64,000 nt of DNA, taken from NCBI GenBank assembly GCA_963924565.1, contig OZ004613.1:6572001-6636000 (forward strand), in the 5' to 3' direction. The notes below the pieces were generated by a model. The model was not told the origin of the DNA, ran no database searches, and worked only from the letters and a program-made list of their open reading frames with translations. The number at the start of each line of letters is the position of its first letter. Positions within the stretch are counted from its first letter, which is position 1. This DNA comes from Ascidiella aspersa. Its lineage: Eukaryota. Below are positions 6,301 through 60,316 of this stretch, piece by piece. The position numbers and the translations under genes were made by a program.

Positions 6301-9300
6301 GTGTATAAAAAATAAAACGACAAGCAATCGTAAAACGTTAACAAACCTTGTGTTTTGTTTTCGCCATTGTCTCCATAAACATTTCTAAACCGTTGCCGGT
6401 AAATGTGAGTTGCCTGTAAGATTCCCCGATGCTGATGACCAACTCCCTTTGTGTTGCTCGAAGCACGTGACAGAGACTTGACACTTCACTGGGAAGAATC
6501 GTTCCACCCTTTAAACGAAGCTCTTCTGGGAGGGAATCGGCTACTTTTGCGGTGATTTCTTCATCGTTTGATTCCTGCGCCAAACTGCAAAGCTTAAACA
6601 AATCAGAGTCAAAGCTCTCGTCATCGTTTGATAAAAGTTGAGATCCAAGTGAATCAATCAGACCATTCAGCAAATCTTTCTTGCTGGCAACATCGGTTGA
6701 AGAGATTTTAAAAATAGGCTTTAGCTTACGGTGGAGTCCCGTGTTTAGCAACCCGAAAAGAAACCGAAGAACCATTTCCCACGTATTACTTTCCATGCTT
6801 TTCAGCAGCCCAGAAAATGTAGCCAGGTCAGTATCGAACAACAGCTTAAGTGATGTAAAAAATTCTTGCCAAAGAACATGAATGAAGAAGAATACATTTT
6901 CCCCTTCCAGTATACGAAGGTTGAGGTCGCTGGAGAAAACTTGCATGCTGAGAAAGTCCTCCATTCCTTCAGCATCAAGTCCGACTTCATCAAAGTCTTC
7001 TTCATCGAACGTGATCTTGTCGTTGAGCATTCCGTATAAAGCCAGGTCAGAAAGTTTGCGCAAAATCCTAGGGTGATCCCTAAACTTAGGAGAGCGAATA
7101 CAATCAGACACAAAAGCCGCAAACACATCTGCGAGCATAAAAGTGCCATCTTTAGTGCTATGCTTTATGATGTAAGGTGCGACGGTTTTCGCAAATATAG
7201 GAAGAAAGCACAAAGCCTTTGCGTGTGGGTTTTTACCAAGTGACTTGGTGACCTTCTCGTAATCTTCTTTCTCTGGGCAAACTTGTCGGAAATACAAATC
7301 TTGAGAGCTTTCGTTGAAACCGATTACCTTGACTACAAAGTGGGGCTTGCAATTAGGATGTAGCTTAAGAAAGGCTCCTGGTCGTGAAGTAAGGAGCTTG
7401 TGAGCATTAGCAAGAATGTCGCCACGGAGTAGGTTTTGTAGAATGACAACCGGCGTTGCGCGATCGTACAATCCGATCACTGGAGCATCCAAGTCCAGAT
7501 CTTTGAACCTAGGTTCGTCCAAACCATCCAGGAAGATAAACAGCTCGTTGGATTTGGAAAGCCTTTCCAGTATTTGATCATCTATTTCCTTTTTGTGTTT
7601 CCAGTTTGGGTCGGATGACAGGAATTCCAAAACCCCCATTTGTTTATTAAGATTTAAAGGCTTCAAGTATTTAAAAAGCCAATATCCCTTTTCCCCGGCA
7701 AATAATCCATCTACAAACTCCTTTAGTATTTGTAAGGTAGCTGTAGTTTTTCCAATTCCAGCTATTCCAGTCATGCCGACCACGTTGCCATGTCTCTCGA
7801 CGTAATCGTCATTTGCTGCTTTATTGCTATAGTTCTTTCTTTTAGCTTCATTGATTGCTTCTTCTTTTGCAGCAGTAAATAGTTGGTTGAGTTTAAGCGT
7901 GGTTGAGTTGACCTGGTTCTCTCTGAGTCGTTTCAACCCCTTTAAACCAAACTCCTCCAATGGTGCTTGCGAATCCCGAATGATGTCAAGAGGAACTGGG
8001 TTGCTTGGTAGAGTTCCGATGACCTTATTAGCTGCTTCCTGAGACTTTTCTTGCCATGATGCTGCTGAAAAAGTAAGAATTATTCTTTAAAGCTGAACGC
8101 CAACAAGGCAAAATAAATCGAATAAAATTGAAATGTTTTCCGCAATGTTAATGCACCCAATTTGTTCACCATTTTGTTTTATTATGTGAACCAGCACATA
8201 TGAATGTTTAACGTTCTTGTTATAAAAAATAGCAAACATTTTTTCTCTGCACCCTTAGCTTAACCCAGCCACCGAAGAGTGAGTAAATGCTTAACTTTAT
8301 TTTGCTTTAAAGCGAAACGCGAGCGAACGATAAGCTACAAATGCCTCCTGTAACCGTAGGAGCTGGGTTTGCACAATTTTATTCATAAACGTTTTTATTT
8401 ATTGCCAAACCATTCTTTGTGTTTTGGTTGTCTGAAAGTGATTTTGCTTTAAACAAAAGTTTCGCCGTTTATTTATTGTTACTGGTGATTACTTGTTATG
8501 TATCTCCCACTTAAAAACTCCTTAACAAGCAAAAAGCTGATAAACGAATTCACAGAAAATAGTAAAAGAGTGTTGTATTAATATTTTTAATTGGGATCAG
8601 CAATATCGGAAATCGTTCTAGCAAACGACATTACCATATTTGTAGTATCAATTTAGCGCCGTCGTATAACAATTTAAATAAAACGAAGACATGCCCCTTC
8701 CTTATGACCTACACAGGTTTATATTGTTTAAAATGGGGATACTATTGTATATTTAAAATGGGGGCTGATATTATATTGATTAAAATGGGGATACTTTTTA
8801 TTTTTTAACTTTTTGTTTTCTAAACAACGCAACCATTTCTGTACAGCTGCTACGGCGACTTAGGCGACTTAGGCGACTTAGGCGACTTAGGCAACTTAGG
8901 CGACTTAGGCGACTTAGGCGACTTAGGCGACATACGAGTCATAATTTTAGGCCCAACGACGGTTATATGATGCTTGTGTTTTATCAATTTGAATTCATGA
9001 TAAGTCGGTTCATTGCACGGAATGATGTAACTATTGTGGTGCAACCCACACTTGGTCATTCGTTTTACATCAAAGGTATCACCAACCGTTGACAAGTGAG
9101 GTCGCTGTTGAGTCGGAAGCCACTCCAGGTCCCGGTTGCTGGCCATATATATGAACGTCGCCATGGAGGTTTTGTATGGGACCTTGATGACCGTAAACAT
9201 CACCAATGTTTACAGGTAGGATATTGATTGGCTGGTTGTTTGCTGGCGGAAGCTGAGGTGAATTTTCATCCTGTATAAATACGTTCATGTGTAAATTTAA

Positions 9301-9881
9301 TTTAATTTCGACATATTCGGCTCATTTGACTATTTAAAATGTGTTTTACGTAAAACAGCTTTCAAAAAAATATCAAGTAAATAATGTGATTAAACAGAGA
9401 TATATAATGTGTAAAATTAACAGCCAATTTAATATGGTTTGAAGTGCAAATATTTCTCCATTATTTTTATTTAATAATGTTTGATTGAAAAATTGTTTCT
9501 TTATTTCTATATTACCATTCGCACTAAAATTAAGCCTTATGTTAAGAAATGTAAAAATCGTTGGTGGCTCTAACGGATGTTAAAGTATTTTAGCGTATAG
9601 TATCCACTACACAGCCTTGCAAATAAAATGTTTGAATTAAGTTAAATTTATCTGAACACAATTTTTCAAATTTTAAACTAAAAATTTTTTTTTTGACAAA
9701 ATTTTGACCTATTAGAAAACCATTGATTTGTTATGTTTTCGGGTTTATACAAAACAAAACCAAATGCTTATTTGATATTTATGAGATCGGTGACATGTAA
9801 CTAAAATTACAAATCAGCAAAGATTTATATTATTTTATTCCACCAAAAACTTACTTGATTTTGGTTTCGAGTATCGGCCAT
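227..9881 (-). CDS. NLR1: RHIM-like/NACHT/LRR receptor, multi-exon, 3' end runs off the window start
   Basis: Phase-compatible exons with AG/GT boundaries: 9881-9855 (MADTRNQNQ), 9270-9087 (RHIM-like), 8064-6347 (NACHT), then LRR exons 5254-5102, 4326-4171, 3283-3122, 1770-1609, 388-227. The same layout occurs in two paralogs. Confidence 0.85.
1609..1770 (-). CDS. NLR1 LRR exon (162 nt, type C; not in ORF track)
   Basis: LEKLDLSNNNMDSRGLSCLATSVHNINKLELEDC; CAG acceptor and GTAAGT donor. Confidence 0.85.
3122..3283 (-). CDS. NLR1 LRR exon (162 nt, type C)
   Basis: MELLELYNSKLDSRGLGCLA...; TAG acceptor and GTAAGT donor. Confidence 0.85.
4171..4326 (-). CDS. NLR1 LRR exon (156 nt, type B; not in ORF track)
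   Basis: MEEFSVDNLESSEISCLATSVHNISKLKLWEC; TAG acceptor and GTATGT donor. Confidence 0.8.
5102..5254 (-). CDS. NLR1 degenerate LRR exon (153 nt, type A; not in ORF track)
   Basis: MELVHVGTTGSCDLSTLSTCVRKINRLWLEKT...; homologous to 16556-16708, 17208-17360 and 56739-56891. Confidence 0.8.
5623..5794 (+). mobile_element. Short Penelope-like 3'-end remnant with 44-bp inverted arms
   Basis: 5623-5666 is the near-perfect reverse complement of 5751-5794; the arms enclose a hammerhead motif. Confidence 0.6.
5711..5754 (+). ncRNA. Minimal type I hammerhead ribozyme
   Basis: AACC-CTGATGA-GG(T)CAGC-loop-GCTGCC-GAAA-CG-TC-GGTT: full catalytic core, stem I AACC/GGTT, stem II, palindromic ACGT in place of stem III; predicted cleavage after GUC at 5750. 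Confidence 0.8.
6347..8064 (-). CDS. NLR1 NACHT exon
   Basis: Walker A GIAGIGKT, Walker B LFIFLDGLDE, sensor-1 LLTSRP, CFLP, winged-helix FIHVLWQEFF, LRFLFGLL. The ORF-track start at 7960 is an internal TTG; the exon starts at the CAG acceptor. Confidence 0.92.
8854..8931. repeat. 9-bp tandem repeat (GGCGACTTA) x ~8.5 in NLR1 intron 2
   Basis: Directly visible; one variant unit. Confidence 0.95.
9087..9270 (-). CDS. NLR1 exon 2, RHIM-like/His-Gly heptad motif
   Basis: PINILPVNIGDVYGHQGPIQNLHGDVHIYGQQ; phase 0 acceptor, phase 1 donor matching the NACHT exon. Confidence 0.8.
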
Positions 9882-12179: not shown

Positions 12180-12605
12180 ACATTATTGTCGCCTGCTTTG
12201 ACCCCTATGCTGAACCAGGTGTTGACCCCTGTGTTGACCCGTGCTTTGTCGCCTGTGTTGACCACTATGTTGAAACACGTGTTGATCCCTGCGTTGACCC
12301 GTGTGTTGTCCCGTGCTTTGACTTCAGTGTTTACCTCATGTTGATCCCGACCCTTAAGTTGAGCTTTGCTTTTACCATTGTGGTGTTTTATCGGACTTTG
12401 ACCTCCTAATATTCGAGGCACTGTTTGTTGACCTTTGTGGTGTCCCAAGATATGACATTGAACTCATAGCATTCGTCGCACTGTGTGTTGACCTTTGTGG
12501 TGTCCCAAGATATGACATTGAACTCATAGCATTCGTCGCACTGTGTGTTGACCTTTGTGGTGTCCCAAGATATGACATTGAACTCATAGCATTCGTCGCA
12601 CTGTG
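12180..12605. repeat. 60-bp tandem repeat x ~3 (12417-12605) next to a degenerate 12-bp (GTGTTGACCCCT-like) array
   Basis: Lines 12421, 12481 and 12541 are near identical; 12-bp periodicity at 12190-12345. Confidence 0.9.
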
Positions 12606-15600
12606 TCTTGTACTCTGCATTGACCTCTGTGATGACCCCTGTTGAAGTAAATATATATAGGCTTCCCGTTAACAGGTATAATAATTATCTATTTATGATA
12701 ATTTGCTTATTGATCTGGTTAATAATGTACATCTAAACCGGTGGTAGGATGTGGGCCATGGCCCAGTAGTTTGCGACGAGACCATTTCCAGTCGGTAAAT
12801 CGAGCTTTTTGGAATTATTGCAACTAAATATGTTTGTTTTACTAAAATAAATCTAAGCATATCAAAACGATAGGCCCGAGGTCATTTACCATGTTTTTTG
12901 CTATTTTTAAATTACATAAAGGCAAAAAAGAGCTTCGCACGAATTTTTGTTTTTCCATCATAAGCGTTTAAAGGAAACTACTCAGACTAAGGGCGCCATG
13001 CTTCTTACTCTGGAACTATGAAAATTATTTTGTTACACAGTTTTTCTGGTGATCGTAGATGAAATGTCACTGCCTAAAAATGGACCATGTTCGACGTTTA
13101 TATGAAGTCTATAAACAAATAGACTTAAGAAACCTTAATTTTCGGTTAAACTGATAATTTCGGTTAAACTGATCAGCAAATATCAAACAAAATTGGACTT
13201 GAAATACATTCAAGAAAAAGGTGGAAAAGCGAGCTTTTATTGTAGTAAAAACTCGTTTTTTCACCTTCTTTTAAACGTTAAACAAAGCGAAATCATGCAT
13301 TGCAAAAAGGTCAGAACTTGAATCCTTATTTAAGACAAGTTCGCTTTAACGCCACCGACTACTATTAAACTTTGATCTGCTTATTTCGCAAATAGCTGCT
13401 TGGTTGCCATTGCGGTTGCACATTCGATATAGTAGCACTGTGACGTCACACGTCTAAACACTGACGTCAATAGTGTCGCAACGTTGCCCTGGCAACATAT
13501 TCTTACGTTTTGAGTGCCTACCTTGCGCAGAGAATCCACGTCAGCTTCATCGATGCCGCAATTATCCAACACCAGCTCTTTTACATTGTGGGCACAAGTT
13601 CGGAGGAAAGCGAGTCCTTGCGATCCCAACTTGTTGTAGCTTAGGTCCAACCTCGTCATCTATATAATCACAGCATGATATAAGATACAATCAGGTGTTG
13701 GGCTACATATAGCTTGCTAAGTTTGAAACCAGTGCATGCAATTTTACCCGGAGAAAAACAATTCAGTTAAATAACCTTTGGCAAAATAGCTTTATATGAT
13801 GTTTTTACCTATTTATGAGCCTAAATGGATTAAATAACACGTAATTAACTATGCGTTTTGCAACTATTTGAAAAAAATCTTTGAAATCAACCTGAAAGTT
13901 CATTAAAATAACATTTCCAAAGGTGACATAGAAAAGTTAGATCGGATATTTTGTATTAAAGATGAATAAATGTGCATGACTGCCCAAATTTACTTTAGAA
14001 GTGCTGTATGTTGTTTATTTTAAGACTGTTTTTTTTACAGTCATAAAGCGTGGTTAATGTTATTCGTTACTATATGTAAGACTTTTTTTCATGGATGTTT
14101 TTTAAATCGTAACTTTTATTTTAATGTATAGAAGGATGTATCTTTATTGAATCCAAAGACATTGACAGCAGGTTTCTGCTTGTCATTCACTGTTCCGCAA
14201 ACGCCTATTTTGAAACCCCCAAAATTTTAGAGACCGTGCTGGGTGTTTTGGGATAGCATGTTTCCTCACCAGGAAGATATTGTTATCAGTTAATCTTAGC
14301 CATTCGAATTTTGTTTGATAAATTACTGTTTGACAGATCCATCGCGTTGTATAGGCTATAGCGTTACCAGGTTAAAGGAAAGCGCTTTAGAGTTATTCAG
14401 TAAATATATCAGTGTGAGTCAATGGTGTTAATAAAGTAATTTTTTAGAAACTTGTTTAAACGTGAACAATACTTATATTTTTTCGTATGGTTTTTTCACC
14501 TGATTATCATTTTAATATTCAACACATCCTTCAGTCAAATAACACACACTTACAGGTCGATCCATTCGTGATATGGCGTCAGTTAGAGGTTGCAGATCGG
14601 AACCAGCGATTTCGCAATAGGTTAATTCCAGCTGGTTGATGTTGTGTAAACTTGTTGCCAGGCAACTCAAACCACGTGAAGTCAGCTTTTTCCAACACAG
14701 GTCTAACAATTCCATCTACATCAAGCAGGGTTTCTTAAACTTTTTTTAATACGGTCCCAAAAAATTCTGGATCGTATGAACCATGTTGGGCATAAAGTTT
14801 TTTCCGAGATGACGTTTTTATGGGTTTAAAAAAAGAAGTTTCGATCAAACTGGTCAGCAAGTGCCAAACAAAATTCGAGTCTAAATACACTTGACGAGAA
14901 GGTGGAAAAGCGAGTTTTGTTAAAGTCTGACCATAATCATTACACCTCAGCAGTATGGTGCTACCTGCAGCACAGGTTAAACAACACTATTTCTGAAGAT
15001 ATAATGAACTATGGTAAAACAGTGCTAAAATTCAAATAAATCTAAATCCAGAAAGCTCTTGGAGGACCGTGGAACATTTTAACTGGCAAAATTGTTGTTA
15101 AAACGTGTAGTTTTAAAGAATTTAACAGCGACAATTATAGGTCGGACTTTCGCGCGAAGTGCAAAAGTAATTGTGTTTGTTTGATTTAAAATTTACGTCT
15201 TTATTCATGATTACAATGAAACGGTGTAATCAAATATCTAAAAACATGATAAATTTAATTGCCAATTAATAGCTTCTGACGTAGGCAATTCGAATATGGC
15301 CGTTAAAAACTTTCGATGTTAATATTTAAAAACGATTTATAACCGAAAATCAATACGATAAGTTACTTATATTGATGATATTCCCAAAATAAACGAATCA
15401 AGTTGCATTTACGTAACGAGCCAGTTTGGAAAAGAGCTGACACACGATTTCTGTATTCGCTTATACATGTGCGTTTATTTGCTAATATAACCACTAACAC
15501 AAACATACAGGCATATTTCGTTGTGAGATGGCGTCGGCTAGAGGTTGTAGATTTGACTCAGCAGTGTCGCAGTTCCACAACTTCAGCTTGTTGATGTTGC

Positions 15601-18600
15601 TTGCACTTGTTGCCAGGCAACTCAACTCACGTGACCCCAAGTTGACCACTCTGAGTTCTTCCATCTACTCAAAATAGAGTTAGGTTATCTTACGGATAAA
15701 AACTATAATTTAAAAAACAGAACAGAAACAGCGTATCGTGGATATAAACCAAAAAAGTGGATAAGGTTTGATTTAGATTTTACTCGATAAATATGTTCGC
15801 TAATATATTTAATTTCTATTAAAACAAAAACAGGAAACGGAAATGCTACGACAAAAAGTATATATGCAAGAATTAACATACGTTAGATTTGATAACATTA
15901 TTTAATAAATAACTTTTCAATAATAGATGCATACATACATGTACAACACGAACAACATACATGTACAACAACAACTGTCATATAGCCCTTCTGAAGTCAT
16001 TTTTGATCAAGGTTTACGCTTTACATGTCATAGTACTCCGAAAGTCGTCACCAGACATTTCGACAATCACCGCAGGCAAGTTGTTTTCTAAAGCAGGGGT
16101 TCTTAAACCATGGACCCCTTAGGGGTATGTCAACTAGTTTCAGGGGTTCATGAAGCCTTAATTAATTGAAATATAAGTGTATATTTAAAAAGCAATAATT
16201 TTTTTCCGAAAAAGTGTTTAACTAAACGTAAAATGATTTTGCACAGAATGTATATTAAGACTTCACTGAGCATGCTTTCACATTTTTGGACCGGAAACAT
16301 CAGATTTTTAAAGTTTATTTGTATTGTGACATCAATTTATGACGTCATCTTTAAACTTCCGTGCCTATATACACTGGTCTACGCAAAGCAAAAATAGTTT
16401 TTAAGTGTCCGTGGTAAATAAAGTTTAAGAACCCCTCTTCTAAAGCAAACTGGTCTTGCTTGTATGAAAATGCGTAATTGATGGACTGATTCGGTTGATG
16501 ACTCACGGCATAATAACTATTATGATAAAACATTGTTAGCTGTTGGATAACTTACAGGTGTTTCTCTGCGTCCAATTGCTTCAGTAAGAACCTCGAAACC
16601 GGACAGATCACCCGTGTTGTTCAACCACAGGCGGTTTATCTTATGGACGCAGGTAGACAAGGAATTTAGGTCACGTGATCCAGTTGACGTCACACGAATA
16701 TATTCCATCTACAAAATACAGCAAGATATGCCAGGGGAGGGCGACAACTTATGCGCCTATCAGTTTGTCTCGCCGCTTCCATTCTTGACCTACCTCTTGT
16801 CTATGACGTAGTCCATTGGTTCTCAACCCTTTTTATGACTGGGAACCCTTAAACGTTTTAAAACTGAATCCTCCAGACGAAACTTAGTTGTGAAGAGGGC
16901 ATTTACATCTGTACACTATACTAAGGAAATATAACCTCGCAAGATTGTCGCGTTTAAGCCTCTAAATGAGTACTCTATGTTTAGTATCTGAGTAATAATT
17001 ACCCTTGCTGAAGGATAGTTTAGCGGAAGGGTCTGCAATCTGGCTTACAAGCCACAAGTGACTTTTCATCTAGTTTTATACGGCTCTCATTTTCAGGTTT
17101 TAATTGAGCCCTGTCAGATTTTCTGTGCTTATAGGATTACGCCCGCCCAACGGCCATGACCATTTTGACAAACCATCATGTCGATAATAGCTAGTGAGTT
17201 GACTTACCGGTTTTTCTCTGCGTGCAATCGCTTTAGTAAGAACCTCGAAACCGGACGGATCGCTCGTATTCTTGAACTCCAGGCGGTTTATCTTATGAAC
17301 GCAGGTGGACAAGTCAGTGACCTCAGGTAGTCCAGTTATCTCGACACGTACATAATCCATCTATAAAATGAAAACAGGATATGTTTGACTTCGGTAACTA
17401 ATATATAAAGGTTCTCAAGCAAATGCAAAAAAAATAAATGGCGTGGTCCTAAGCACAAGTCCAAGCTACTCGCTGTTTAATCAGAAAATCAAATAAAACA
17501 AAAGCAGAGCATAAAGTTAAAAAAACGCATTTCGCGTTTTTAGATAAATACACAAAGTCAATAAAAGACACGTAATTCTTTACTGAACAAAGTTATACAA
17601 ATCCCGTTGGTTATTTGTCTTTATTTCTAGCGGTTCAATTTCCGCGTCCTGGGGCGAAGTATTTACCGGTTTTGTGGCAGTTTCATTCCCAATGGGTCCA
17701 CTGACTCCACTGTACTTCGAAAATGTTTTGCTATGAATATAAATGTGCCTTTTGGGGGAAAATGTACCGTGGCTGTGAAAAGGTGCAGCGTTTGTTTAGC
17801 ATTTCCCGATGCTGGGTTGTGCTTGTTTTGTGATGTGACCACAATCCTTTTCGATTAACCCGTGCAGAAAAGCGGAATATATGAGAACGCCCTTTTAATA
17901 ACCGAGCGTCTTAATATGAGCTACCAGGGTCGTTGGTGAATGAGACGTCACCTCCTTGTTAAGGACGTAGGTGCACTTAAACCAGTGTTGTAATGACCTG
18001 TTAAATAAGTCACTATATATAAATGACTCGACTTAAGTCTAAGTAATGACTTATGTTTTTAAATGACTTCAAGTGGACTGAAGTAATTTAAAAATCACTA
18101 AATAAAACTACTTATAAACGCCACGGAAAACGACCATAGGATTAGCCTATTGTTATATTTTGCACCACACAAAGGCCCGATGTTTAGACCAGTCTGAGAT
18201 TGCACCATTTTACATGAAGTCGTAAACCCAAGCTGTTTGCGACAAACATTTAAGAAATGTTACATCAACTTGATACTACTTATTTATATTTTTAAAAACG
18301 ACAAGGAATCGTAAAACTTCACAAACCTGGTGTTTTGTTTTCGCTATTGTCTCCATCAACATTCCTAAGCAGTCGCCAGTAAACTTAACGGGATAGAAAT
18401 CACCGATGCTGATGACGAGCTGCCTGTCGGGTGTTTGAAGCACGTGACAGAGACTTGACACTTCACTTGGAAGGATCGTTCCACTCTTTATGCAAAGCGT
18501 TCTAGGTAGGTAATCAGCAACTTTTGCGGCGATTTCTTCATCATTTGATTCCTGCGCCAAACTGCAAAGCTCAAACAATTTGGAGTTAAAGCTTTTGCCA

Positions 18601-21600
18601 GCGTTTGATAAAAGTTGAGATCCAAGCGAATCAATCAGACCTTTAAGCAAACTTTTTTTGCTGGCAATATCGGTGGAAGAGATTTTGAAAATAGGCTTTA
18701 GCTTACGGTGGAGTTTTGTATTTAGCAACCCAAAAAGAAACCGAAGAATCATTTCCCAAGTATTACTTTCCATGCTTCGTAACAGATCAGAAAATGTAGC
18801 TACGTCCGTATCGAACAACAGCTTTAGTGATGTAAAAAATTCTTGCCAAAGAACATGAATAAAAAGGAACACTTTATCCCCTTCCAGTATACGAAGGTTG
18901 AGGTCGCTAGAGAAAACTTGCATGTTGAGAAAGTCCTCCATTCCTTCAGTATCAAGTCCAACTTTATCAAAGTCTTCTTCTTCGAATGTGATCTTGTCAT
19001 TGAGCATTCCATTTAAAGCCAGGTCAGAAAGTTTGCGCAGAATTCTGGGGTGTTCCTTAAACTTAGGTGAGCGAATACAATCGGACACAAAAGCCGCAAA
19101 CACATCTGTCAGTGTGAAAGTGTCATGTTCAGTGCCATGTTTTTTTATGTAGGGGACGATGGTTTTGGCAAACATAGGAAGAAAACACATAGCCTTGGCT
19201 GCTGGACATTTACCAAGTGAGTTGATAACTTTCTCATAATCTTCTTTCTCCGGGCAAATTTGTCGGAAATACAAATCTTGAGAGCTCACATTGAAGCCGA
19301 TTACCCTGACAACAAAGCAGGGCTTGCAACTTGGGTGCAGCTTGAGAAATGCTCCCGGTCTTGAAGTAAGCAGCTTGTGAGCATTGGGAAGAATGTCGCC
19401 ACGGAGTAGGTTTTGTAGAATGACAACCGGCGTTGCGCGATCGTACAATCCGATCACTGGAGCATCCAAGTCAAAATCTTTGAACCTTAATTCGTCCAAA
19501 CCATCCAGGAAGATAAACAGGTTGTTGGACTTGGAAAGCCTTTCCAGTATTTGATCATCCATTTCTTTTGTGTGTTTCCAGTTAGGGTTGGATGACAGGA
19601 ATTCCAGAACACCTGTTTGTTTATTAAGATCTAAATCCTTCAAGTATTTGAACAGCAAATGGTCCCTTTCGTTCGCAGGTAGTCTATCTGCAACGTCCTT
19701 TAGAGTCTGTAAGACAGCTGTAGTCTTGCCAATTCCAGCTATTCCAGTCATACCGACCACGTTGCCATGTCTCTCGACGTAATCGTCATTTGCTGCTTTA
19801 TTGCTAAATCCCAACATTTCCGATTCATTGATTGCTTCTTCTTTAGCCGCAGAAAACAGTTGGTTGAGCTTGAGCATGGTTGAGTTGTCCTGGTTGCCTC
19901 CAAGTCGCAGCAATCCTCTTGAACCAAATTCCTCCAATACTGCTTGGAAATCCCGAATGACATCAAGAGGAACTGAGTTTATTGGTAGAGTCCCGATGAT
20001 CTTTTCAGCTGTTTCCCAAGACTTCTCCTCCCATGATGCCGCTAATGATGTAAAAAGGATTTCGTTTCTCCAGTTTGTATTTAAGTAAGTTTAAAAGCAC
20101 ATTTGAATAAATTACTTCCTTGGCTATGTTTAAGTGATATGCCGTCATATTAACTAACATTTTGCTGTTGTGCGCCATTATTCTCTTTTGGTCACGGAAC
20201 AGTTAATAAAAAAATACACTTATAGAAGCTATAAATGCAATGCTTTTTATTCCATGTTAATAAAGCATTATATATGTTGTGAGTCGCGTTCAGGTAATAA
20301 AAGTATTGTCGAGTGGCGGGATTTGTAGTTACCATTTTTGGTAAATATAACCTGGTGAACAGTTACACACTGCTCTAGATCAGTGGTTATTAACATTTTG
20401 ACACTGGCGGCCAAATAAAAATACTAAAAGCGTTTTTTCGGAGGGTAACGAGAAATCTAAAGCAGATAGCTCACTGAGACAACTAGGAAACGTTATTAAT
20501 AAACAACTATACTGTAGTATTATACAGGGTTGCTAGAAGTTGCGGGATTCGATCTGGTTAACAACTTGTTCGCAAACTTACTCATGTTAAAAGCTTGACG
20601 TATATCCTTTGTACAGGTTTAAAAATACAAATGGTTTTAAGAGCTGCATCTTTGTTGTGCGCATGCGAGTTACCTGTGATTGGGTGCATCTTTCACTAAT
20701 TTGGGATATAATTTTATTATCCTTTGGTTTGCGCGAACCGTCAAAACCGATTTATTCTCACAACAGGTTAATGTAGGTAATCTGGAAATTTTAGCAGGAA
20801 ATTTAGACATTTTAGGATAATTACTTATTTTAGCGTTATGTTTGTGCGAGGCACCACAATTAAGGTAACATTCGAAGCTCGACAGCCAATTTTTCACACA
20901 AATTTGCTAAATTTTCGGGATTAATCTTTTATTTTTGTCGAACAGGCAAAAATTATATCGTACCGGTACCGATCCGCAGACCGAACAACTGTTCTAGAGT
21001 GCCTAGTTTGTGTCGTAAACGTTTAAAATCTCACAAGAATAAAAATACAACCGTTTCAAAGGGCCAGGTTAATTGTCAAAAACGTTTATTGATGTTCTAC
21101 ATCAAAACTATCACTTACCATAAGAGGTCGCTGTTGAGTCGTGTACAGTTTCCGGTCCGAGTTGGTTGCCATGGAAATGATAGACGTTGCCATGAACGTT
21201 ATGAATAGGACCTTCATGCTGTTGAATGTCTCCAATTTGCATATTTAATTGGTCAACATTGATTTGCTGGCTGCTGATTTTTTGTAAATTTTGAGCTGCT
21301 TGTTCATCCTATCAAAACCATTTTTAATTTAGTTTTACTTTTTTAACTGCAAACGGTTTATCTATGAATATTGTTTAAATAACATACAGGCACACAAAAA
21401 TATATACTGTATACATACATATATATATATGTGTGTTTAAGTATTTTTTGATATGTTTTTTGATATCACTTTAAAAGTGTCGGCCTGGAAAAAAAGAGAA
21501 TTGCTTGCACTAAGCCTTACCTCCAAATTACCATATACCAACTATTCGATAAACTCTATACTGGCTTAAAATATTATATTTTTGTTTTTAATTTGTACAT

Positions 21601-21663
21601 TGTAATTACCATATTCGATTTAGGTTGATTTGCTTCTTTGTTTCCGTTTCGAATGTCGGCCAT
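12372..21663 (-). CDS. NLR2: RHIM-like/NACHT/LRR receptor, apparently complete and intact
   Basis: Exons 21663-21610 (MADIRNGNKEANQPKSNM), 21308-21119 (RHIM-like), 20041-18327 (NACHT), LRR exons 17360-17208, 16708-16556, 15664-15509, 14715-14554, 13659-13522, and a candidate terminal exon 12638-12372 (less certain). All phases are compatible. Confidence 0.85.
18327..20041 (-). CDS. NLR2 NACHT exon
   Basis: GIAGIGKT, LFIFLDGLDE, LLTSRP, FIHVLWQEFF; uninterrupted frame. Confidence 0.92.
21119..21308 (-). CDS. NLR2 exon 2, RHIM-like/His-Gly heptad motif (not in ORF track)
   Basis: Hand translation: DEQAAQNLQKISSQQINVDQLNMQIGDIQQHEGPIHNVHGNVYHFHGNQLGPETVHDSTATSY; TAG acceptor and GTAAGT donor. 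Confidence 0.85.
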
Positions 21664-33862: not shown

Positions 33863-34001
33863 TCTAAACCTGAATCACAAAACACTTGAAAAAACTACAA
33901 TAAATAAGTGCCTTTCCATTTCTATATAATATGTTGTTGCAGTTGTAATACAGCTAACATGAAGTGCTGAGACCCTCGTTGAGCATAAGTATAGGCTAAA
34001 T

Positions 34002-43725: not shown

Positions 43726-44901
<1,176 letters not shown>

Positions 44902-48279: not shown

Positions 48280-48307
48280 CCTACTTTAACCTACCAATTT
48301 GCGCCAT
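48280..48307 (-). pseudogene. SDR copy G, remnant of the first codons (MAQIGRLK) with D-type upstream region
   Basis: 48294-48900 is homologous to 40384-41000. Confidence 0.75.
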
Positions 48308-51806: not shown

Positions 51807-54800
51807 AATGTATTTCATACATAATAAAAATAGAACGCGTAGTCGAGTCGCATACAAAGTTTGATACTCCTATCAAATCACTTTGTAAGTTTTCCACTAT
51901 TTTTGTTGTTAATGCAACATTGAATAAGTAACATAAATGTGTTCCCGATCTATTTTTAAAACGATTAGAGGAAAAAAGAGTAAACCGGAAAGGGTTTTCT
52001 ACCAATTTTTATAAACTTTCTTGTATAGTCAGGCGTTTTCTTTCCATCCTTATTCCATTTCCAGTGCAATAATCGCAATTCAAAAAGCAAGCCTTTAAGT
52101 ACAAACGTATAGCAATTTTTTTGACAGACACCAATGAGGACAAATATAAGAAACTGGCCAAAGTAGAAATAGACACAATTGCCCCGAACAACAGACAAGA
52201 ACAACCGAAGTAAGGGTAAAAATTCACGTTTCAACCATGATCGTATCAGCTTGAGTTGTACTTATATAAAAATATATTGCATAGACATATCGATATGTTT
52301 CAAAACAATAATGCAAGCTCAAACATGTGCAAAGTGAAATAAATAAATACAGACTTAACATGTATATGTGTGTGCACACAACGCAGGTATGTGGCAACAA
52401 AACGTTAAGTTTAGATATAAAACGAGCAAGAATAGGCGGAATTCAAATACTAAAAAGCGATGAAGATTGTTCGAATGTATCTTAAACGGCTTGACTGCAG
52501 GTCCAGAGTTTTGGCGGGGATAGACTGTTCCTGCAAAAATACAAAAATACGAAGTTATCGGATATCGGAGGTGATGTTTAATGTTTCACAGATGGTTATT
52601 TTATTGCAGGTCGAACATGCAATACATGTCACAAAAACAGTCGAAAAAAATCTTGTCTTATAGGTAATACATTGTTATGTTCTATGCATGGTGCGTAGTC
52701 GGACTTGGGACTTAGATCACGAAAAACAACCCGAGTGCAGAGTCCGACGCGCGCATCAGGATTACCAAATTTTTAAACCGATAAGGCAGAAAATTGTAAA
52801 TTGTAAAGGTGGCATAGTATATAGCAACTAATATATAGAGACGTATTGTGGGTGGATGAATATTATAACACCCCTGTGAGTGGATTGCTGAGTATCCACC
52901 TTATTTCAGTTACGTAAGTGGGTGAAATATAGGCTGTAGGGTCGGAACCGGACCCTGGATCGCACATTTGGCCGGAGTTGGATTCATGATTCGGGTTTAA
53001 TTTGTTGGCCGGTGTCGGACTCGGGAGTTGGACTCGGGTTATTTTTAACCGACTCCGCAGCCCCGGCTCTATTAAGTTCCTACCTTATAAAGCGAATCCA
53101 CATCAGCTTCATCGATGCCACATCCAATCAACTCCAGCTGCCGTACATTGTGGGCACAAGTACGGAGGAAAGCGAGTACTTGCGATCCCAACTCTTTGTT
53201 ACCTCTAAGGTTTAACTTGGTCATCTACAAAGGCAAAAAATAATGTCTAGTACAAAACGACATGACAATTTCATTGTGGGCGATAGATTTTTTTGTGTCC
53301 CTTATTGTTGCTATTTAAAAAGTCGACCCACCCCTTATTCCAGCGGCCGGCATATTTTTTGTCGCCGCCCAAAATTCTTTTTCAAGAGCTCATTGCAGGC
53401 CCACTACGTGAAACGAATGACGTCATAGAGTTACGTCATAAAGCACTTAATCTTAAAAAACCTTGCGAATAGTGCGAAAAGTCTACATAGTCTCATTTAA
53501 TAAGCATTTCACTTTGTAGCGTTTATAAGTCATAAAGTCCCAGCATAAAACACTTAATCTGAAAAGATCTTGCATGTAGTGCAAAAAGTTTATAGTCTTA
53601 TTTAATAGGCATTTACTATTGTAGCGTTTATAAGTCACACGGCGTAACATACCTTATAGTATGCATAAAAAAATATAGTTTTAAGAGTGTACATAGCACG
53701 GTTGATCGGTGACCTTATCATGAAAAAATAAGCAAAAGTAAAAAAAACCTTAGCCACGCCATTTTTAAAATACCCTAAATCGGATGTAATTGTACTGCTA
53801 TCACGCGGCCCACAACTACATGACAAAACTGAAATATTAAAATTTAGCTAGTCAGCCACTAAAAATTACTCAAAGTCCCACATTAGGGGCGCGGCTCACA
53901 GTTTGCCAACCACTGCCTTATTCCAACAACACACACTTACAGGTCGATCCATTCGTGAAATGGCGTCGGTTAGAGGTTGCAGATCGGAACCAGAGATTTC
54001 GCAGTTCACCAATTCCAGATGCTTGATGTTGTGTACACTTGTTGCCAGGCAACTCAGAGCACGTGACTCAAACTTGTTGTGGCTCACGATCAATTTTTCC
54101 ATCTGTGCGATTAATTGAATTTAATTTTCATAATTGACCTTTCCATGGAACCTCAAACAACTACAAATATACGACCAGCCAAATAAGATATATGTATTGT
54201 ACTGTAAGTCTATACAACCAAAACCCGAGTGGGTAACGAGACGGGCTTTTTATAATAAAGTAATTTATGTTTCTAATCAGCCGGTCTTTTGAACTGAACA
54301 AAATATAAAATTAAAATAGTCACTGTTGGTATTCAGCAGGGGTGGTGTCCATGGACCCCTTAGCGGTCCACGAAAGCCTAATTGAAACGTTAGTGTGTAT
54401 TTAAGAAGTAATTCTTTAAAAAAAGACTTTAATTAAAAATTAAACGCCTTTGCACTGAATATAGTTAGACTCGATTTCACTTTCACATTATTTAGACTGA
54501 AATCAGCAGATTTCTGAAGTTTATTTGTATTTTGACCTCAAAGTCATGTATGACGTCATCTCTGAAAATCTCATGCCTCCGGTGGTCCACGCAAAGAAAA
54601 AAAAAAGGGGTTGGCGTTAAATAAAAGAACCCCTGGTATACAGTGACGGGTAAATACACAAAAGCATCAAGCATTAGTTCAGTCACCGACTCTTGCCCCA
54701 AATTCCATCGCATGTGTTTCTATCTCACTGATATTAAAACGTTTAATGCACTCGTTATTCCGACAACACGCACTTACAGGTCGTTCCAGTCGGGATATGG

Positions 54801-55376
54801 CGTCGGTTACAGGTTGCAGATCGGATCCAGCGATTTTGCAGTTGCGCAACTCTAGCTGCTTGATGTTATGTACACTTGCTGCCAGGCAACACAAACCACG
54901 TGACTCCAACTTGTTTCCGTACAGGAGCAGCACTTCCATCTACAATGACAAGAAATGCGAATTGTTATGTGTTCACCGGCTACAAGTTTCCATAACTTAC
55001 AAGGTGCTTTGTTTTAAACGCGAATAACAAGCTGTAGGCCTTTGTTCGTAGAACGAAAACACTGTTGCCTGTTTGACGCAAAATAATCCGTTGGATACTG
55101 CTGGGCTTTCACATGAAAAACGAATCAGGACAGCCAAACGAACATTTAGGCTAAATCTAATGTATTTTTATATAGATCCAACCAGATCTGGAGAAAAAGC
55201 GTTGTCTTTTATGCAATTTAAGAACGGAAACTTTTGGTGTTTTTCTGACTTACAGTGTAGGCTCACGCCATGTTTACACAGAGGAGTAAATTTCCGAAAA
55301 AAATGTTTGCAGCAAAATCAATTGCATCCATTATATATGTATTTATTGCCTTTTCTTCTTTGAATAGGCCCTAAAG

Positions 55377-55908
55377 CAGGGTTTCCCAAACTTATTGGGA
55401 CCACGGACCACTATTCGTGAATCTGTTTTTTCGCGGACCGCAATACAAATAACAAAAATAAAAAAATACTTATTTAAAACACTGACAACATCGGTGGGAC
55501 GGATAGTATTGCTTCTTTCTGCATATTTTTTTAATTCTCGGAGGTGTTTATGAAAGGCAAACTCGTAAGTCAGAGTCCACGGAAAGTCTGGACCTGTATT
55601 TTTCCGAATGGCGATAAGAATATATATTATTACGTCATAGAATACGAGAATTTTTCGTAACCAGCCTTTTGACTACAACGAAGATGCAGCAAGTAAGATT
55701 TGCGATACTGGATAGCAGAAGCTTTCGAAATTATTAGGTTGTAAAAAACTGCTGCAATTATTATTTTTTTTTGCTGCAATTATTTTTTGGGTACGTACTG
55801 TACAACGTATATGTGTGACTTTTTAATTTCTTGTCATATGGCCACGGACCACCTGTGCAGTCGTCGCGGACCACCGATGGTCCGCGGGCCACAGTTTGGG
55901 AAACCCGG
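55377..55908. mobile_element. hAT-type MITE in an NLR3 intron
   Basis: TIR CAGGGTTTCCCAAACT (one mismatch); perfect TSD CCCTAAAG. Confidence 0.9.
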
Positions 55909-57014
55909 CCCTAAAGTTTAGGAAAATAAAGCCGCAAGGTAAACAATAGATCACAAAACGAATTTTGAAAGTAAACTTACAGGTCGATCTATTTGTGATA
56001 TGGCATCGGTTAACGGTTCAAGATTTGATCCAGAAATGTCGCAGAATCTTAAAACCAGCTGGTTGATGCTGCGTACACTTGTTGCCAGGCAACTCACCTC
56101 ACGTGACCCCAACTTGTCTACTCTAAGTTTTTCCATCTAAAGCATAAATAGGTGTTGGTAGGTTAACTTTACCTAAAAAACCTAATGAAAAAGTCAAATG
56201 GCGCGGTGTAAGATTCAAACGGAAACAAATGATTTACACCGAAAAATTCTTATCGGCAATTTTTCAGTTTAATAATTTCATTGAGCTTTATTTTATTTTT
56301 TTTTTAGTTTCAATATTATTTTTAGCTTAAAAATTTAATTCGGACTTTTAAAAGTATGGATCATCGTTGTCCTGGTGAACAAAAGGATGGCTGGTTTAGC
56401 TAATACGGATTAGCTATCGCCTTGAGTTTATGTTTGTTACTTTAGGTGTAAGAGGTGGTAATTTGCAATCGAATTTTAACATTAAGGATTTGTAAAATTT
56501 CATTTTAAAACAAAAAATTAATCAAAAGCTTTCTGAGTTTACAGTCAAAGAACAATCCAAATACAGTTACCTATTTGTTATAATTCTGATATGTAAATCA
56601 ATTTCTAATGGAAAATGTGAAATAGTAAACACGATATTAACCGAAACGGCTTTAAATAATAGCAAGCATAAAAAACTAGTAAGGGTTAGTGATCATAACG
56701 ATACGTTCATGTTAATTGTTGCACGAAAGTTAACTTACAGGTGTTTCTCTGCGTGCGATTGCTTCAGTAAGAACTTCGAAACCGGATAGGTCACCCGTGT
56801 TGTCTAACCCTAGGCGGTTTATCTTATGAACGCAGGTGGACAAGGCAGTGAAGTCACGTGATCCAGTTGTCTTCAAGCACGCTTCATCCATCTACAAACC
56901 AAGAACAAGGCTTTATAATACAGGGGTGCGAATTGATCTATTTTTCGTCGTTTGATTAGATTAAGTGGTATATTAAAGCCGAAAAAATAAAAGTTTGATA
57001 AAAAGTTTACAAAC

Positions 57015-58715
57015 CTTATTGCAGGTTTTCGCAACTGTTCCCATCAGCACTTCTAAACCATTGCCTGTAAATGTAACTGAGGAGGCATTAATGACCATTT
57101 TTCTGTCAGTTCCGTGAAGCACATGGCAGAGACTTGACACTTCACTGGGAAGAAGTGTTCCACTTTTCATTTGAATCTCTTCAGGAAGGAACTCGGCAAC
57201 TGACGCTTTATATCTTTATCATTTAGTTCCTGTGCCAAACTGCAGAGCCTAAACATTTTGGAGGTGAAACTCTTACCATCGTTTAACAAAAGTTGAGATC
57301 CAAGCAAATCAAACAGACCTTTTAGCAAATGTTTTTTGCTGGCAACATCAGTGGTAGAGATTTTAAAAATAGGCTTTAGCTTACGGTGGAGTTTTGTATT
57401 TAGCAACCCGAAAAGAAACCGAAGAACCATTTCCCAAGTAGAGCTTTCCATTTTTTGTAGCAGCCCAGAAAACAAGCTTAAGTCTGTTTCGAAAAAGAGT
57501 TTAAGTGCTGTGAAAAACTCTTGCCATAGAAGATGAATAAAGAAGAATACTTTTCCCCCTCCAGTATACGAAGGTTGAGGTCGCTGGATAAAACTTGCAT
57601 GTTGAGAAAGTCCTCCAATCCTTCAGCATCAAGTCCGACTTCATCAAAGTCTTCTTCGTCGAATGTGATCTGATCATTGAGCATTCCGCTTAAAGCCAAG
57701 CCTGAAAGTTTGCTCAAAATGCCGAGATCTTCTTTGAACTTAGGCGAGTGAATACAGTCAGACAAAAAAGAGGCAAACACATCTGTCAGTGTGAAAGTGC
57801 CATCGTTAGTGCCATGCTTTATGATGTAAGGTGCGACGGTTTTGGCAAATATAGGAAGAAAGCACATCGCTTTAGCGGCTGGGTTTTGACTAAGTGATTT
57901 TGTGACCTTCTCATAATCTTCTTGCTTTGGGCAAATTTGTCGGAAATACAAATTTTGAGAGTTTTCGTTAAAACCGATTACCTTGACTACAAAGTGGGGC
58001 TTGCAATTAGGATGTAGCTTAAGAAATGCTCCCGGTCGTGAAGTAAGCAGCTTGTGAGCATTGGCAAGAATGTCGCCACGGAGTAGGTTTTGTAGAATGA
58101 CAACCGGCGTTGCGCGATCGTACAATCCGATCACTGGAGCATCCAAGTCAAGATCCTTGAACCTAGGTTCGTCCAAACCATCCAGGAAGATAAACAGCTT
58201 GTTGGATTTGGAAAGCCTTTCCAGAATTTGATTATCTATTTCCTTTGTGTGTTTCCAGTTTGGGTCGGATGACAGAAATTCCAGTACACCTATTTGTTTG
58301 TTAAGATCCATTTTCTTCAAGTATTTGAAAAGTAAATAGCCTCTTTCATCTGCTGGTAGTCTTTTTGCAACCTCCTTTAGTGTCTGTAAACTAGCTGTAG
58401 TTTTCCCAATTCCAGCTATTCCAGTCATACCGACCACGTTGCCATGTCTCTCCACGTAATCGTCACATGCTGCCTTATTGCTAAATTCCCTGCTTTCGGC
58501 TTCATTGATTGCTTCGTGTTTTGCAGCAGTAAATAATTGTTGAACTTCGAGCATGATGAGGTTCACTTCGTTGTAAAGGCGAGTAAGTCCTTCGACACCA
58601 AACTCCTCCAATGGTGCTTGCGAATCCCGAACGATGTCAAGGGGAACTGAGTTTCTTGGTAGAGTCCCGACGACCTTATCAGCTGTTGTCTGAACCTTTT
58701 CCTGCCATGAGACCG
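57015..58715 (-). CDS. NLR3 NACHT exon (split over three ORFs by frameshifts)
   Basis: GIAGIGKT, LFIFLDGLDE, LLTSRP; ORFs 57478-58806, 57167-57475 and 56973-57170 are consecutive pieces. Confidence 0.88.
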
Positions 58716-59600
58716 CTGAAAACGTAAAGGATTTTGCGTTTAAGTTGAATACTGCTGCTGAATAGTACGTATTTGTCTTAAGTCGACTGTTTCTTTTAAC
58801 ACACATATCGGATTTAAAGAACAGTTAGTATTTGATTTGCTATTAAAACAGTAAAGTTTGTATGTGTTGATGGAGCCCTACAAAGGAAGAAATATTATAT
58901 AAAGTGGAGCGCGGTAAATTTCACAGACTCTCTGCGAATACCAAAGAAATGCCTGCAGCAAAACTCTTGATTTCCATAACTGTTTGTATTCTTTTTAGTT
59001 AATATGTTTGAGAGTGGCATAGAAAACCAACATATATGGCGTTGCAAAGTGACGTCAAAGCGTGACGTTCTGATACAAGTAAATTTTAGAAAATCCTGTT
59101 TCCAGTCGAACACATGCGCAAATTAACAACTGAACTTGAAAAGATATAGATTTTAAGTAAAGGTAAAAATAGATTCTAAATACAAGTAAATGGTAACATA
59201 TAGCGTTTGCAAGAAGCTCGAAACAATTTTTTTTTGTAGCAAAACGTTGAATTGTGAAGGAGACGGGACGCATTGACCACACCATCTATATCATTACCAT
59301 ACTAGATAATAGCATATTTGACGTAGATGAGGAAAAATAAGTTGTGAATGACATTAACGCCCCATCTGTAGGTTACAGAAACACGCAAATAGTTCGAACT
59401 TTCGCCATAGAGGTGGTGCGTACAATATAATGGCCGTGAAGCGCGAAAAATATATATTATGGCCGTAAAGCTCGTAAAGCGCGAAAAAAGTATTACCGTA
59501 GCTTAAATTTAATAAAGAGTTTTGTGAGAGCAAACCAAAAGCCATCACAGACTCATCGCATCTGTCGATCAATAATGCAAGCAAGGCAGGCTAGAAAACA

Positions 59601-59980: not shown

Positions 59981-60126
59981 GCAGCTTCAAAAGGGCTAGC
60001 TCACAGTTGATAACGCACATATGTGTGTGACATGTTTTTATTAGGCGACTTAGTTTAACTTTGCGTTCTACCCAGGTCTATTTGTGTAAACGATCCAGCG
60101 GTTATCATATAAAAAATTCTACCAAC

Positions 60127-60316
60127 CACTATCAGATGTGGGAACGGTTGAATCATGGGCCAACTGTCCCGGTTGGATGGTGTGGGAATTGATAATGTTT
60201 CCGTGAAGGTGATGAATGGGACCGTGGTGCTGTTGTATGTCACCAATCTGCATATTCAAATGCTCAACGTTGATTGGTTGGTTGATTTCTGGTGGATTCT
60301 GAGCTGCATTCTCGCC
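60127..60316 (-). CDS. NLR3 exon 2, RHIM-like/His-Gly heptad motif
   Basis: GENAAQNPPEINQPINVEHLNMQIGDIQQHHGPIHHLHGNIINSHTIQPG; phase 0 to phase 1. Confidence 0.82.

What the first reader, a model, noticed from the sequence alone, without database searches (positions are those of the whole stretch)
9087..60316. NLR family whose N-terminal effector domain is replaced by a RHIM-like, His/Gly-heptad (candidate amyloid) signalling exon
Seen: all three NACHT-LRR genes have only a 9-18 aa first exon and a ~62 aa second exon (9087-9270, 21119-21308, 60127-60316) before the NACHT exon, with no CARD, PYD, DD or TIR-like sequence. The exon flanks diverge, but the core IN[IV]..[VM][NQ]IGD[IV]xxHxGPIxx[LV]HG[ND][VI] is conserved. 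Known: RHIM cores ([IV]Q[IV]G in RIPK1/RIPK3/ZBP1/TRIF, cryptic RHIMs in Drosophila Imd/PGRP-LC) signal by amyloid templating, and fungal and bacterial NLRs use short N-terminal amyloid motifs to activate cell-death effectors. Inference: an expanded animal NLR family that signals by prion-like nucleation to an effector carrying the same motif elsewhere in the genome.
Basis: partly seen in the sequence, partly recalled or inferred. Interest (0 to 1): 0.9.

Follow-up and report, generated by a model that had tools for sequence, protein, structure and literature searches.

The report
Conserved glycine-spaced leader of sea-squirt NLRs
Three immune-receptor (NACHT-LRR) genes of a probable sea squirt start with a short conserved peptide instead of the usual death-fold domain. 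The peptide is real and under selection, but it is not a RHIM, no other gene carries it, and nothing here shows that it forms amyloid.

Summary
Three minus-strand NACHT-LRR genes each have a 9-18 aa ATG exon, a 61-63 aa second exon and a NACHT exon, all joined in frame. No death-fold sequence was found.

The second exon belongs to a family of 62 copies in this genome. At least 60 of them lie 1-4 kb upstream of a NACHT exon. A second NLR subfamily (17 copies) carries a shorter, single-unit version.

The motif core is under purifying selection while its flanks are not. Its Gly spacing of seven residues is real.

- The Q of "QIG" sits in a two-residue insertion seen in only 2 of the 26 copies read. 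Most of the rest read V-N-I-G.
- The Pfam RHIM model and all other Pfam and PDB profiles do not match.
- Six-frame profile and pattern searches of the genome, and a profile search of 1.84 billion proteins, found no non-NLR carrier.
- The peptide folds as disordered.

My reading is a lineage-specific, proximity-activated interaction tail. An amyloid-like mode is possible but unshown.

The scan reached the same verdict before on other windows of this genome (s1-790889, s1-801712).

The parts
9855..9881 (-). Gene 1, candidate exon 1 (M-A-D-T-R-N-Q-N-Q, 9 aa, donor GTAAGT)
   Evidence: inferred from sequence, no RNA evidence
9087..9270 (-). Gene 1, exon 2 (61 aa + 1 base), main-type motif exon
9142..9228 (-). 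Gene 1, conserved motif core (I-N-I ... V-N-I-G-D-V ... H-x-G-P-I ... H-G-D-V)
6338..8064 (-). Gene 1, NACHT exon (NACHT, NOD2_WH, NLRC4_HD2); acceptor at 8064, 3' boundary not determined
167..4326 (-). Gene 1, LRR exons of about 57 aa each; the gene may run off the window start
21610..21663 (-). Gene 2, candidate exon 1 (18 aa, starts M-A-D-I-R-N, donor GTAATT); conserved upstream of paralogues L008 and L025
21119..21308 (-). Gene 2, exon 2 (63 aa + 1 base), divergent motif exon with M-Q-I-G-D
21177..21263 (-). Gene 2, conserved motif core
18276..20041 (-). Gene 2, NACHT exon; acceptor at 20041
13384..17360 (-). Gene 2, LRR exons
62022..62048 (-). Gene 3, candidate exon 1 (M-A-D-P-L-N-R-H-Q, donor GTAAGT); an alternative ATG lies at 62321
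60127..60316 (-). Gene 3, exon 2 (63 aa + 1 base), divergent motif exon with M-Q-I-G-D and seven His
60188..60274 (-). Gene 3, conserved motif core
57170..58715 (-). Gene 3, NACHT exon with a frameshift near 57,500-57,620 (two overlapping open frames); probable pseudogene or assembly error
53899..56136 (-). Gene 3, LRR exons

Best explanation
Exon 2 is a real coding exon. It encodes a lineage-specific, intrinsically disordered N-terminal tail shared by about 60 tandemly duplicated NACHT-LRR receptors of a probable tunicate. A second subfamily carries it in shortened form. Its roughly 30-residue core has three to four glycine-spaced heptads, G-[D/P]-[V/I]-x4, preceded by I-N-[V/I] and N-[I/V]. 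It occupies the position of the missing death-fold domain. I therefore read it as the signalling end of the receptor. When ligand-driven NACHT oligomerisation brings several tails together, they become a multivalent interaction surface. That surface could form by folding on each other into a small beta-arch assembly, by jointly binding a downstream factor that does not carry the motif, or both. Shown here: the exon structure in frame, the copy number, the exclusive NLR linkage, purifying selection on the core, the heptad periodicity, the lack of any known domain and the lack of a same-motif partner. Inferred: that the tail signals, and that it acts by induced proximity. It is not a RHIM.
For: Splice sites are in phase in all three genes. 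There are 62 copies at E<=2e-11 with no stop inside in 61, and a 17-copy short form. At least 60 of 62 long-form and 16 of 17 short-form exons lie 1-4 kb upstream of a NACHT exon on the same strand. Core dN/dS is 0.08-0.71 against 0.24-2.5 in the flanks. The lag-7 periodicity has z=5.6, with 23 Gly-Gly pairs against 6.2 expected. AF2 gives pLDDT 47 and no stable fold. No Pfam, PDB or Atlas relative was found. No Death or CARD hit lies in the NLR arrays. Ascidian NLRs are reported to lack an N-terminal effector domain (PMC11508797). Short non-globular N-terminal motifs do signal in fungal and bacterial NLRs, and an amphioxus RHIM-NACHT protein exists (PMC4262963).
Against: There is no transcript, protein or functional evidence. 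The mechanism rests on position and analogy. A tail with no detectable homotypic partner differs from every characterised NLR effector module. The ESMFold2 four-copy job gave no answer. The paralogues are young (many are near-identical at the DNA level), so part of the conservation reflects recent duplication. Flank dN/dS near or above 1 shows that much of the exon is unconstrained.
Confidence: 0.5

Rival explanations
1. The motif is an amyloid signalling motif that, once nucleated on the activated NLR, templates the same motif on a separate cell-death effector encoded elsewhere.
For: The motif sits at the N-terminus of an NLR. Its core is rich in G, N, Q and H, with short hydrophobic runs separated by Gly, Pro or Asp turns. 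It is disordered as a monomer. Fungal, bacterial and amphioxus precedents exist (PMC4262963, PMC12261475).
Against: No non-NLR carrier was found. The six-frame profile search gave 62 strong hits and one chance-level hit. The core DNA pattern gave 39 NLR exons and one hit with a stop, against 3 control hits. The 1.84-billion-protein profile search gave only repeat artefacts. The genes flanking the NLRs here are SDR dehydrogenases and a reverse-transcriptase fragment, not effectors with the motif. A motif split across exons or strongly diverged would have been missed.
Confidence: 0.1
2. The tail is regulatory rather than an output module. It could be an auto-inhibitory segment, a degron, or a leader removed by proteolysis at the conserved V-A-x-D|S-T-A site at the end of exon 2.
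For: An Asp followed by S-T-A is nearly invariant (D57), with V or L at P4 in most copies. Most of the exon outside the core is unconstrained, as in linkers.
Against: A 30-residue periodic core under purifying selection is longer than a cleavage site or degron needs. P3 is Ala, Val or Thr rather than the Glu preferred by most caspases (my own knowledge, not tested).
Confidence: 0.2
3. The motif is a true, divergent RHIM, homologous to the RHIM of amphioxus RHIM-NACHT proteins and retained in tunicates.
For: Genes 2 and 3 read M-Q-I-G-D, close to the RIPK3-type V-Q-V-G core (PMC9444067). Amphioxus has an NLR-like protein with an N-terminal RHIM (PMC4262963).
Against: The tetrad (V/I)-Q-(V/I/L/C)-G is not met in any copy read. 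M-Q is a lineage-specific two-residue insertion. Most of the other copies read have V-N-I-G and the rest vary. Pfam RHIM gives no match to the peptides at E<=10, and its 14 weak genome hits avoid the NLR arrays. The PDB profile search finds no RIPK or HET-s chain at E<=10. Kajava et al. found no RHIM in tunicates.
Confidence: 0.05
4. The motif is a degenerate single TPR-like helix-turn-helix.
For: The only sequence similarities found are to TPR repeats of the N-[LI]-G-[ND]-[VI]-Y-x-x-Q-G-D type.
Against: Per-repeat scores are about 5 bits, and significance comes only from summing repeats in the targets. There is no Pfam TPR hit. Pro and Gly interrupt both putative helices. AF2 predicts no helix hairpin.
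Confidence: 0.03
5. The exon is a neutral leader with no specific function, conserved only because the array is young.
For: Many copies are nearly identical in DNA. Flank dN/dS is about 1.
Against: Between the divergent copies dS is 0.7-2, yet seven core residues stay invariant and core dN/dS is 0.08-0.3. A related unit persists in a subfamily whose NACHT is only 62% identical.
Confidence: 0.07

Closest known systems
NLR-associated amyloid signalling motifs of fungi and bacteria (HET-s/HRAM, sigma, PP; BASS1-10)
   Same: A short, non-globular motif rich in G, N and Q at the extreme N-terminus of a NACHT receptor, in place of a folded effector domain. It is predicted to be unstructured as a monomer.
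   Different: Those motifs are defined by a matching copy on an effector protein, usually encoded by the neighbouring gene. No such copy exists here at the sensitivity reached. There is no sequence match to the Pfam models of these motifs, and amyloid formation is untested.
RHIM (RIPK1, RIPK3, ZBP1, TRIF; insect cRHIM; amphioxus RHIM-NACHT protein BF82280, PMC4262963)
   Same: It stands where a death-fold domain is expected on an animal NLR. Two copies have a Q-I-G-D string.
   Different: The core tetrad is not conserved: most copies read have V-N-I-G, and the Q lies in an insertion. The flanks do not fit, the RHIM profile does not match, and no partner proteins were found.
Ascidian NACHT-LRR receptors described as lacking an N-terminal domain (PMC11508797)
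   Same: The same architecture: NACHT plus RI-type LRRs with no CARD, PYD or DD.
   Different: Here the 'missing' N-terminus is a conserved motif exon shared by about 80 paralogues. That paper does not mention it, and I found no paper that does.
Consensus TPR repeat (for example CTPR, PDB 7obi)
   Same: A local string similarity of the N-[IL]-G-[DN]-[VI]-Y-x-x-Q-G type.
   Different: There is no helix-B pattern, Pro and Gly occur throughout, Pfam TPR does not hit, and no helical hairpin is predicted.

Membership tests
RHIM (Pfam PF12721) | Core tetrad (V/I)-Q-(V/I/L/C)-G (PMC9444067) | tested here: not met
   Genes 2 and 3 read M-Q-I-G. Gene 1 and most other copies read have V-N-I-G; others read A-N-F-G, V-N-V-G or L-L-V-G. 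M-Q is a two-residue insertion in the alignment.
RHIM (Pfam PF12721) | Match to the RHIM sequence profile | tested here: not met
   No hit for the three peptides at E<=10. The genome-wide search with PF12721 gave 14 weak hits (best E 0.235), none at an NLR exon.
RHIM (Pfam PF12721) | The motif is shared by interacting partner proteins (homotypic pairing) | tested here: not met
   All verifiable copies are NLR 5' exons.
RHIM (Pfam PF12721) | Forms amyloid fibrils | not testable with these tools
   This needs ThT, EM or solid-state NMR.
NLR-associated amyloid signalling motif (ASM) | Short motif at the N-terminus of an NLR in place of an effector domain | tested here: met
   The motif starts about 25-35 residues from the inferred Met and lies upstream of the NACHT exon. 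The exon joins are inferred, not seen in RNA.
NLR-associated amyloid signalling motif (ASM) | The same motif at a terminus of an effector protein, typically the adjacent gene | tested here: not met
   Searches found none. The neighbouring genes in the window are SDRs and a reverse-transcriptase fragment.
NLR-associated amyloid signalling motif (ASM) | Match to known ASM models (HET-s_218-289, Ses_B, NACHT_sigma in Pfam) | tested here: not met
   No Pfam-A family of any kind at E<=10 except a chance pyruvate-kinase hit at E 0.16. No HET-s chain in the PDB search.
NLR-associated amyloid signalling motif (ASM) | Unstructured monomer with short beta-prone segments separated by Gly, Asn or Pro turns | tested here: inconclusive
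   pLDDT is 47 and the heptad Gly periodicity is real. These fit, but no dedicated predictor (ArchCandy, ASMscan) was available.
NLR (NACHT-LRR) | NACHT NTPase with winged-helix and helical domains | tested here: met
   NACHT E 2e-13 to 2e-15, NOD2_WH E 3e-10 to 4e-9, NLRC4_HD2 in genes 1 and 2 only, below Pfam's cut-off.
NLR (NACHT-LRR) | C-terminal leucine-rich repeats | tested here: met
   LRR_6 and LRR_1 hits on single-repeat exons, one above the cut-off, plus the repeat pattern visible.
Death-fold NLR effector domains (CARD, DD) | A CARD or Death domain encoded upstream of NACHT | tested here: not met
   No hit in exon 2 or in ten upstream ORFs. Genome-wide Death and CARD hits all lie outside the NLR arrays on contig 7 at 0.3-6.65 Mb. 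PYD, DED and TIR were covered only by the all-Pfam scans of the ORFs, not genome-wide.
TPR | A 34-residue helix-turn-helix matching TPR profiles | tested here: not met
   No Pfam TPR hit. About 5 bits per repeat against CTPR. No helix pair in the AF2 model.

The most novel reading that the evidence does not exclude
The glycine-heptad tail is a new class of animal amyloid-like (beta-arch) signalling motif. On receptor oligomerisation it nucleates a cross-beta assembly that recruits the tails of sister NLRs, or an effector whose motif is too diverged or too split by introns for these searches. That would give tunicates, which are thought to lack RHIMs, their own prion-like immune signalling system.
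Probability: 0.15. Interest if true: 0.85.

Novelty: new variant of a known kind. Interest (0 to 1): 0.45.

Why it matters
Ascidian NLRs are usually described as having simply lost their N-terminal effector domain, which leaves open how they signal. This work shows that about 80 of them share a selected, periodic, non-globular N-terminal motif. That gives a concrete handle: a peptide of about 30 residues that can be synthesised, mutated and used as bait. If it self-assembles, it would extend motif-based (amyloid-like) NLR signalling from fungi, bacteria and amphioxus to tunicates. If it docks a folded adaptor, it would identify a new NLR output pathway in the closest invertebrate relatives of vertebrates. 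As it stands, it is a well-delimited lineage-specific motif of unknown function, not a RHIM.

Tried and rejected
Splicing therefore rests on sequence alone.
Two long-form copies (contig 7 at 6,456,915 and contig 6 at 31,280,324) and one short-form copy (contig 7 at 573,425) could not be checked for a downstream NACHT exon.
Every search was done exon by exon, by reference.
- Complex prediction with four copies of the exon-2 peptide gave no answer (score 0.02). It is not evidence either way.
- The ESM Atlas search gave nothing usable (best score 0.79).
- The six hits of the 1.84-billion-protein profile search were read and rejected as repeat-driven artefacts: adhesin heptads, TPR proteins and low-complexity repeats.
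- The NACHT exon search returned only distant relatives, 31% identity or less. Full-length NLRs longer than 968 aa were outside that tool's length range, so that blank says little.
- Rfam at the gathering threshold found nothing in the window.
- A regex scan for a polybasic CaaX last exon, a lead from earlier notes, found none in this window.
- TRAF-type P-x-Q-x-x-D and plant 'MADA' resemblances were considered by eye and dropped as too weak.
Full report
**What is there.**

They translate into open peptides of 61, 63 and 63 residues.
- Each is bounded by a pyrimidine-rich AG acceptor and a GT donor.
- Each ends with one extra G. That G, with the first two bases after a clean acceptor in the downstream open frame, makes an Ala codon and continues into "(A/V)-S-W-(Q/E)-E-K...".

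The downstream frames (6338-8064, 18276-20041, 57170-58715) match Pfam NACHT and NOD2_WH; those of genes 1 and 2 also match NLRC4_HD2, below Pfam's cut-off. The exons of about 57 aa that follow are RI-type leucine-rich repeats.

Upstream of each exon 2 is a short ATG exon starting M-A-D, of 9, 18 and 9 aa, with a GTAAGT or GTAATT donor in phase 0. The 18-aa form recurs upstream of three paralogues, and a 15-aa variant upstream of a fourth.

Gene 3 carries a frameshift in its NACHT exon.

No RNA evidence could be obtained. All searches were made exon by exon, by reference.

**No death-fold domain.**

- The three peptides hit no Pfam-A family at E<=10, apart from a chance pyruvate-kinase match at E 0.16.
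- Ten minus-strand ORFs upstream of the three genes hit nothing at E<=1.
- Genome-wide six-frame searches with the Death and CARD models find such domains elsewhere, but none in the NLR arrays on contig 7 at 0.3-6.65 Mb.
- This agrees with a survey reporting that ascidian NLRs have only NACHT-LRR (PMC11508797).

The organism is probably a tunicate. An intronless SDR gene in the window has its best hits in Ciona savignyi, C. intestinalis and Phallusia mammillata at 43-45% identity.

**The family.**

The window is contig 7, 6,572,001-6,636,000, of a 308-Mb assembly.
- A single exon-2 peptide finds 53 copies in the genome. A profile of 12 diverse copies (A1) finds 62 at E<=2e-11 and one chance-level hit at E 6.25.
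- I cross-matched their coordinates with the 78 scored NACHT exons, out of 290 candidates, and with three loci I read directly. At least 60 of the 62 lie 1-4 kb upstream of a NACHT exon on the same strand.

A second NLR subfamily has a NACHT exon 62% identical to gene 2's and lies on contig 7 at 0.3-1.7 Mb.
- At the same position it has a 21-22 aa exon (consensus in A2). Its "N-D-V-H-I-x-N-Q" resembles the second half of the long motif, "G-D-V-H-I-Y-G-Q".
- It has 17 copies, 16 of them next to a listed NACHT exon.

**Is the motif selected and periodic?**

- Among 12 diverse copies, seven columns are invariant: N, G, D, H, G, I and G.
- Nei-Gojobori estimates give core dN/dS of 0.08-0.71 against 0.24-2.5 in the flanks. 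The core is lower in every computable pair, at dS up to about 2. The number of sites is small, so the values are rough.
- Residue self-similarity peaks at lags 7 and 14 (z 5.6 and 4.2). Gly-Gly pairs at lag 7 number 23 against 6.2 expected, a value reached by 0 of 500 shuffles. The rows are paralogues, so the z-scores are inflated, but each sequence shows the pattern G-[D/P]-[V/I]-x4 three times.
- AF2 with the paralogue alignment gives mean pLDDT 47 and no stable secondary structure. That fits a non-globular segment.

**Is it a RHIM?**

RHIMs are defined by the tetrad (V/I)-Q-(V/I/L/C)-G (PMC9444067).
- Only genes 2 and 3 of this window contain Q-I-G, and both have M at position 1.
- In the alignment their M-Q is a two-residue insertion relative to the rest of the family. 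Most other copies read V-N-I-G, and a few read A-N-F-G, V-N-V-G or L-L-V-G.
- The Pfam RHIM model does not match the peptides. Its 14 weak hits in the genome (best E 0.235) are all elsewhere.
- A profile search of all PDB sequences at E<=10 returns no RIPK or HET-s chain. It returns only a designed consensus TPR at about 5 bits per repeat.

I conclude that the RHIM resemblance is a four-letter coincidence in two derived copies. Kajava et al. (PMC4262963) did describe an amphioxus NLR-like protein with an N-terminal RHIM, and found none in tunicates. So the architecture has a precedent, but this motif is not that one.

**Is there a partner?**

I found none.
- The profile search of the genome found no carrier outside the NLR arrays.
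- A degenerate DNA pattern for N-[IV]-G-D-[IVM]-x2-H-x-G gave 39 NLR exons plus one hit with an in-frame stop. The reversed control pattern gave 3 hits.
- The short-form profile found no non-NLR carrier either.
- A full HMMER pass over 1.84 billion representative proteins gave six hits, all repeat artefacts.
- The genes between the NLRs in this window are HSD17B8-like dehydrogenases and a reverse-transcriptase fragment.

There are limits. Six-frame searches miss a motif split by an intron, the first-look filters are heuristic, and this species' own proteome appears to be absent from the protein library.

**Reading.**

The exon is a real, selected, NLR-specific N-terminal tail at the place where NLRs carry their output module. 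The most economical mechanism is induced proximity. Oligomerisation of the NACHT domains clusters the tails. The clustered tails then either fold on each other (a small beta-arch or amyloid-like nucleus remains possible) or jointly bind a factor that lacks the motif.

I give this general reading 0.5. Within it, I slightly favour heterotypic recruitment over homotypic cross-beta assembly, because no same-motif partner exists.
- Templating to a same-motif effector: about 0.1.
- A regulatory or processed leader: 0.2. An Asp followed by S-T-A is nearly invariant at the exon's end, in a V-A-x-D|S context.
- A true RHIM: 0.05.
- A TPR-like hairpin: 0.03.
- A neutral leader: 0.07.

The four-copy complex prediction gave no answer and is not used as evidence.

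**Earlier notes of this scan.**

Follow-ups on other windows of this genome (s1-790889, s1-801712, s1-790932, s1-801705, s1-790821) reached the same verdict: a conserved heptad motif on about 60-100 sister NLRs, not a RHIM, and no partner. I reproduced those points independently. This report adds:
- the core-versus-flank selection contrast;
- the insertion argument against the Q-I-G core;
- the pattern-level exclusion of other carriers;
- the link to the short single-unit form of the second subfamily;
- the amphioxus precedent from the literature.

Noticed in passing
window 28406-29293, 32120-32944, 39624-40562, 47127-47858 (minus strand); fragments at 33568-33874 and 43729-44901: A tandem cluster of four intact, intronless short-chain dehydrogenase genes, plus two broken copies, lies between NLR genes 2 and 3. 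They are HSD17B8 / (3R)-3-hydroxyacyl-CoA dehydrogenase-like, with best hits in Ciona and Phallusia at 43-45% identity. The copy at 43729-44901 is split over three frames.
   Followed up: partly
window 24618-25649 (+): A 343-aa ORF has a weak reverse-transcriptase (RVT_1) match. It is a retroelement fragment in the NLR-SDR intergenic region.
   Followed up: no
window 57500-57620 (-): Gene 3's NACHT exon changes reading frame, giving two overlapping open frames (57481-58824 and 57170-57622). It is a probable pseudogene or an assembly indel, although its motif exon is intact.
   Followed up: partly
L044:2310-2375 (-) and 16 further places on contig 7 at 0.32-1.65 Mb: A second NLR subfamily (NACHT 62% identical) has a 21-22 aa N-terminal exon, D-N-T-N-I-N-K-S-I-F-A-N-D-V-H-I-x-N-Q-P-N-G. 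It looks like a single unit of the long motif and also ends in phase 1 with a G.
   Followed up: partly
end of exon 2 in all three genes (about 9090-9125, 21122-21160, 60135-60170, minus strand): A nearly invariant Asp is followed by S-T-A-T-S and preceded by [EG]-V-A-x. This could be a caspase-type cleavage or phosphorylation site. It was only noted by eye.
   Followed up: no
window 12375-12684 (-) and 8853-8960 (-): Short tandem coding-like repeats lie in the intergenic or 3' regions. One is a roughly 22-aa unit repeated three times near 12.4-12.7 kb. The other is a 'SPK' 9-base repeat near 8.9 kb.
   Followed up: no
genome contig 4 at 7.85-7.93 Mb (not in the window): Four Death-domain hits about 15-40 kb apart suggest a separate tandem family of DD-containing genes. 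They could not be fetched.
   Followed up: no
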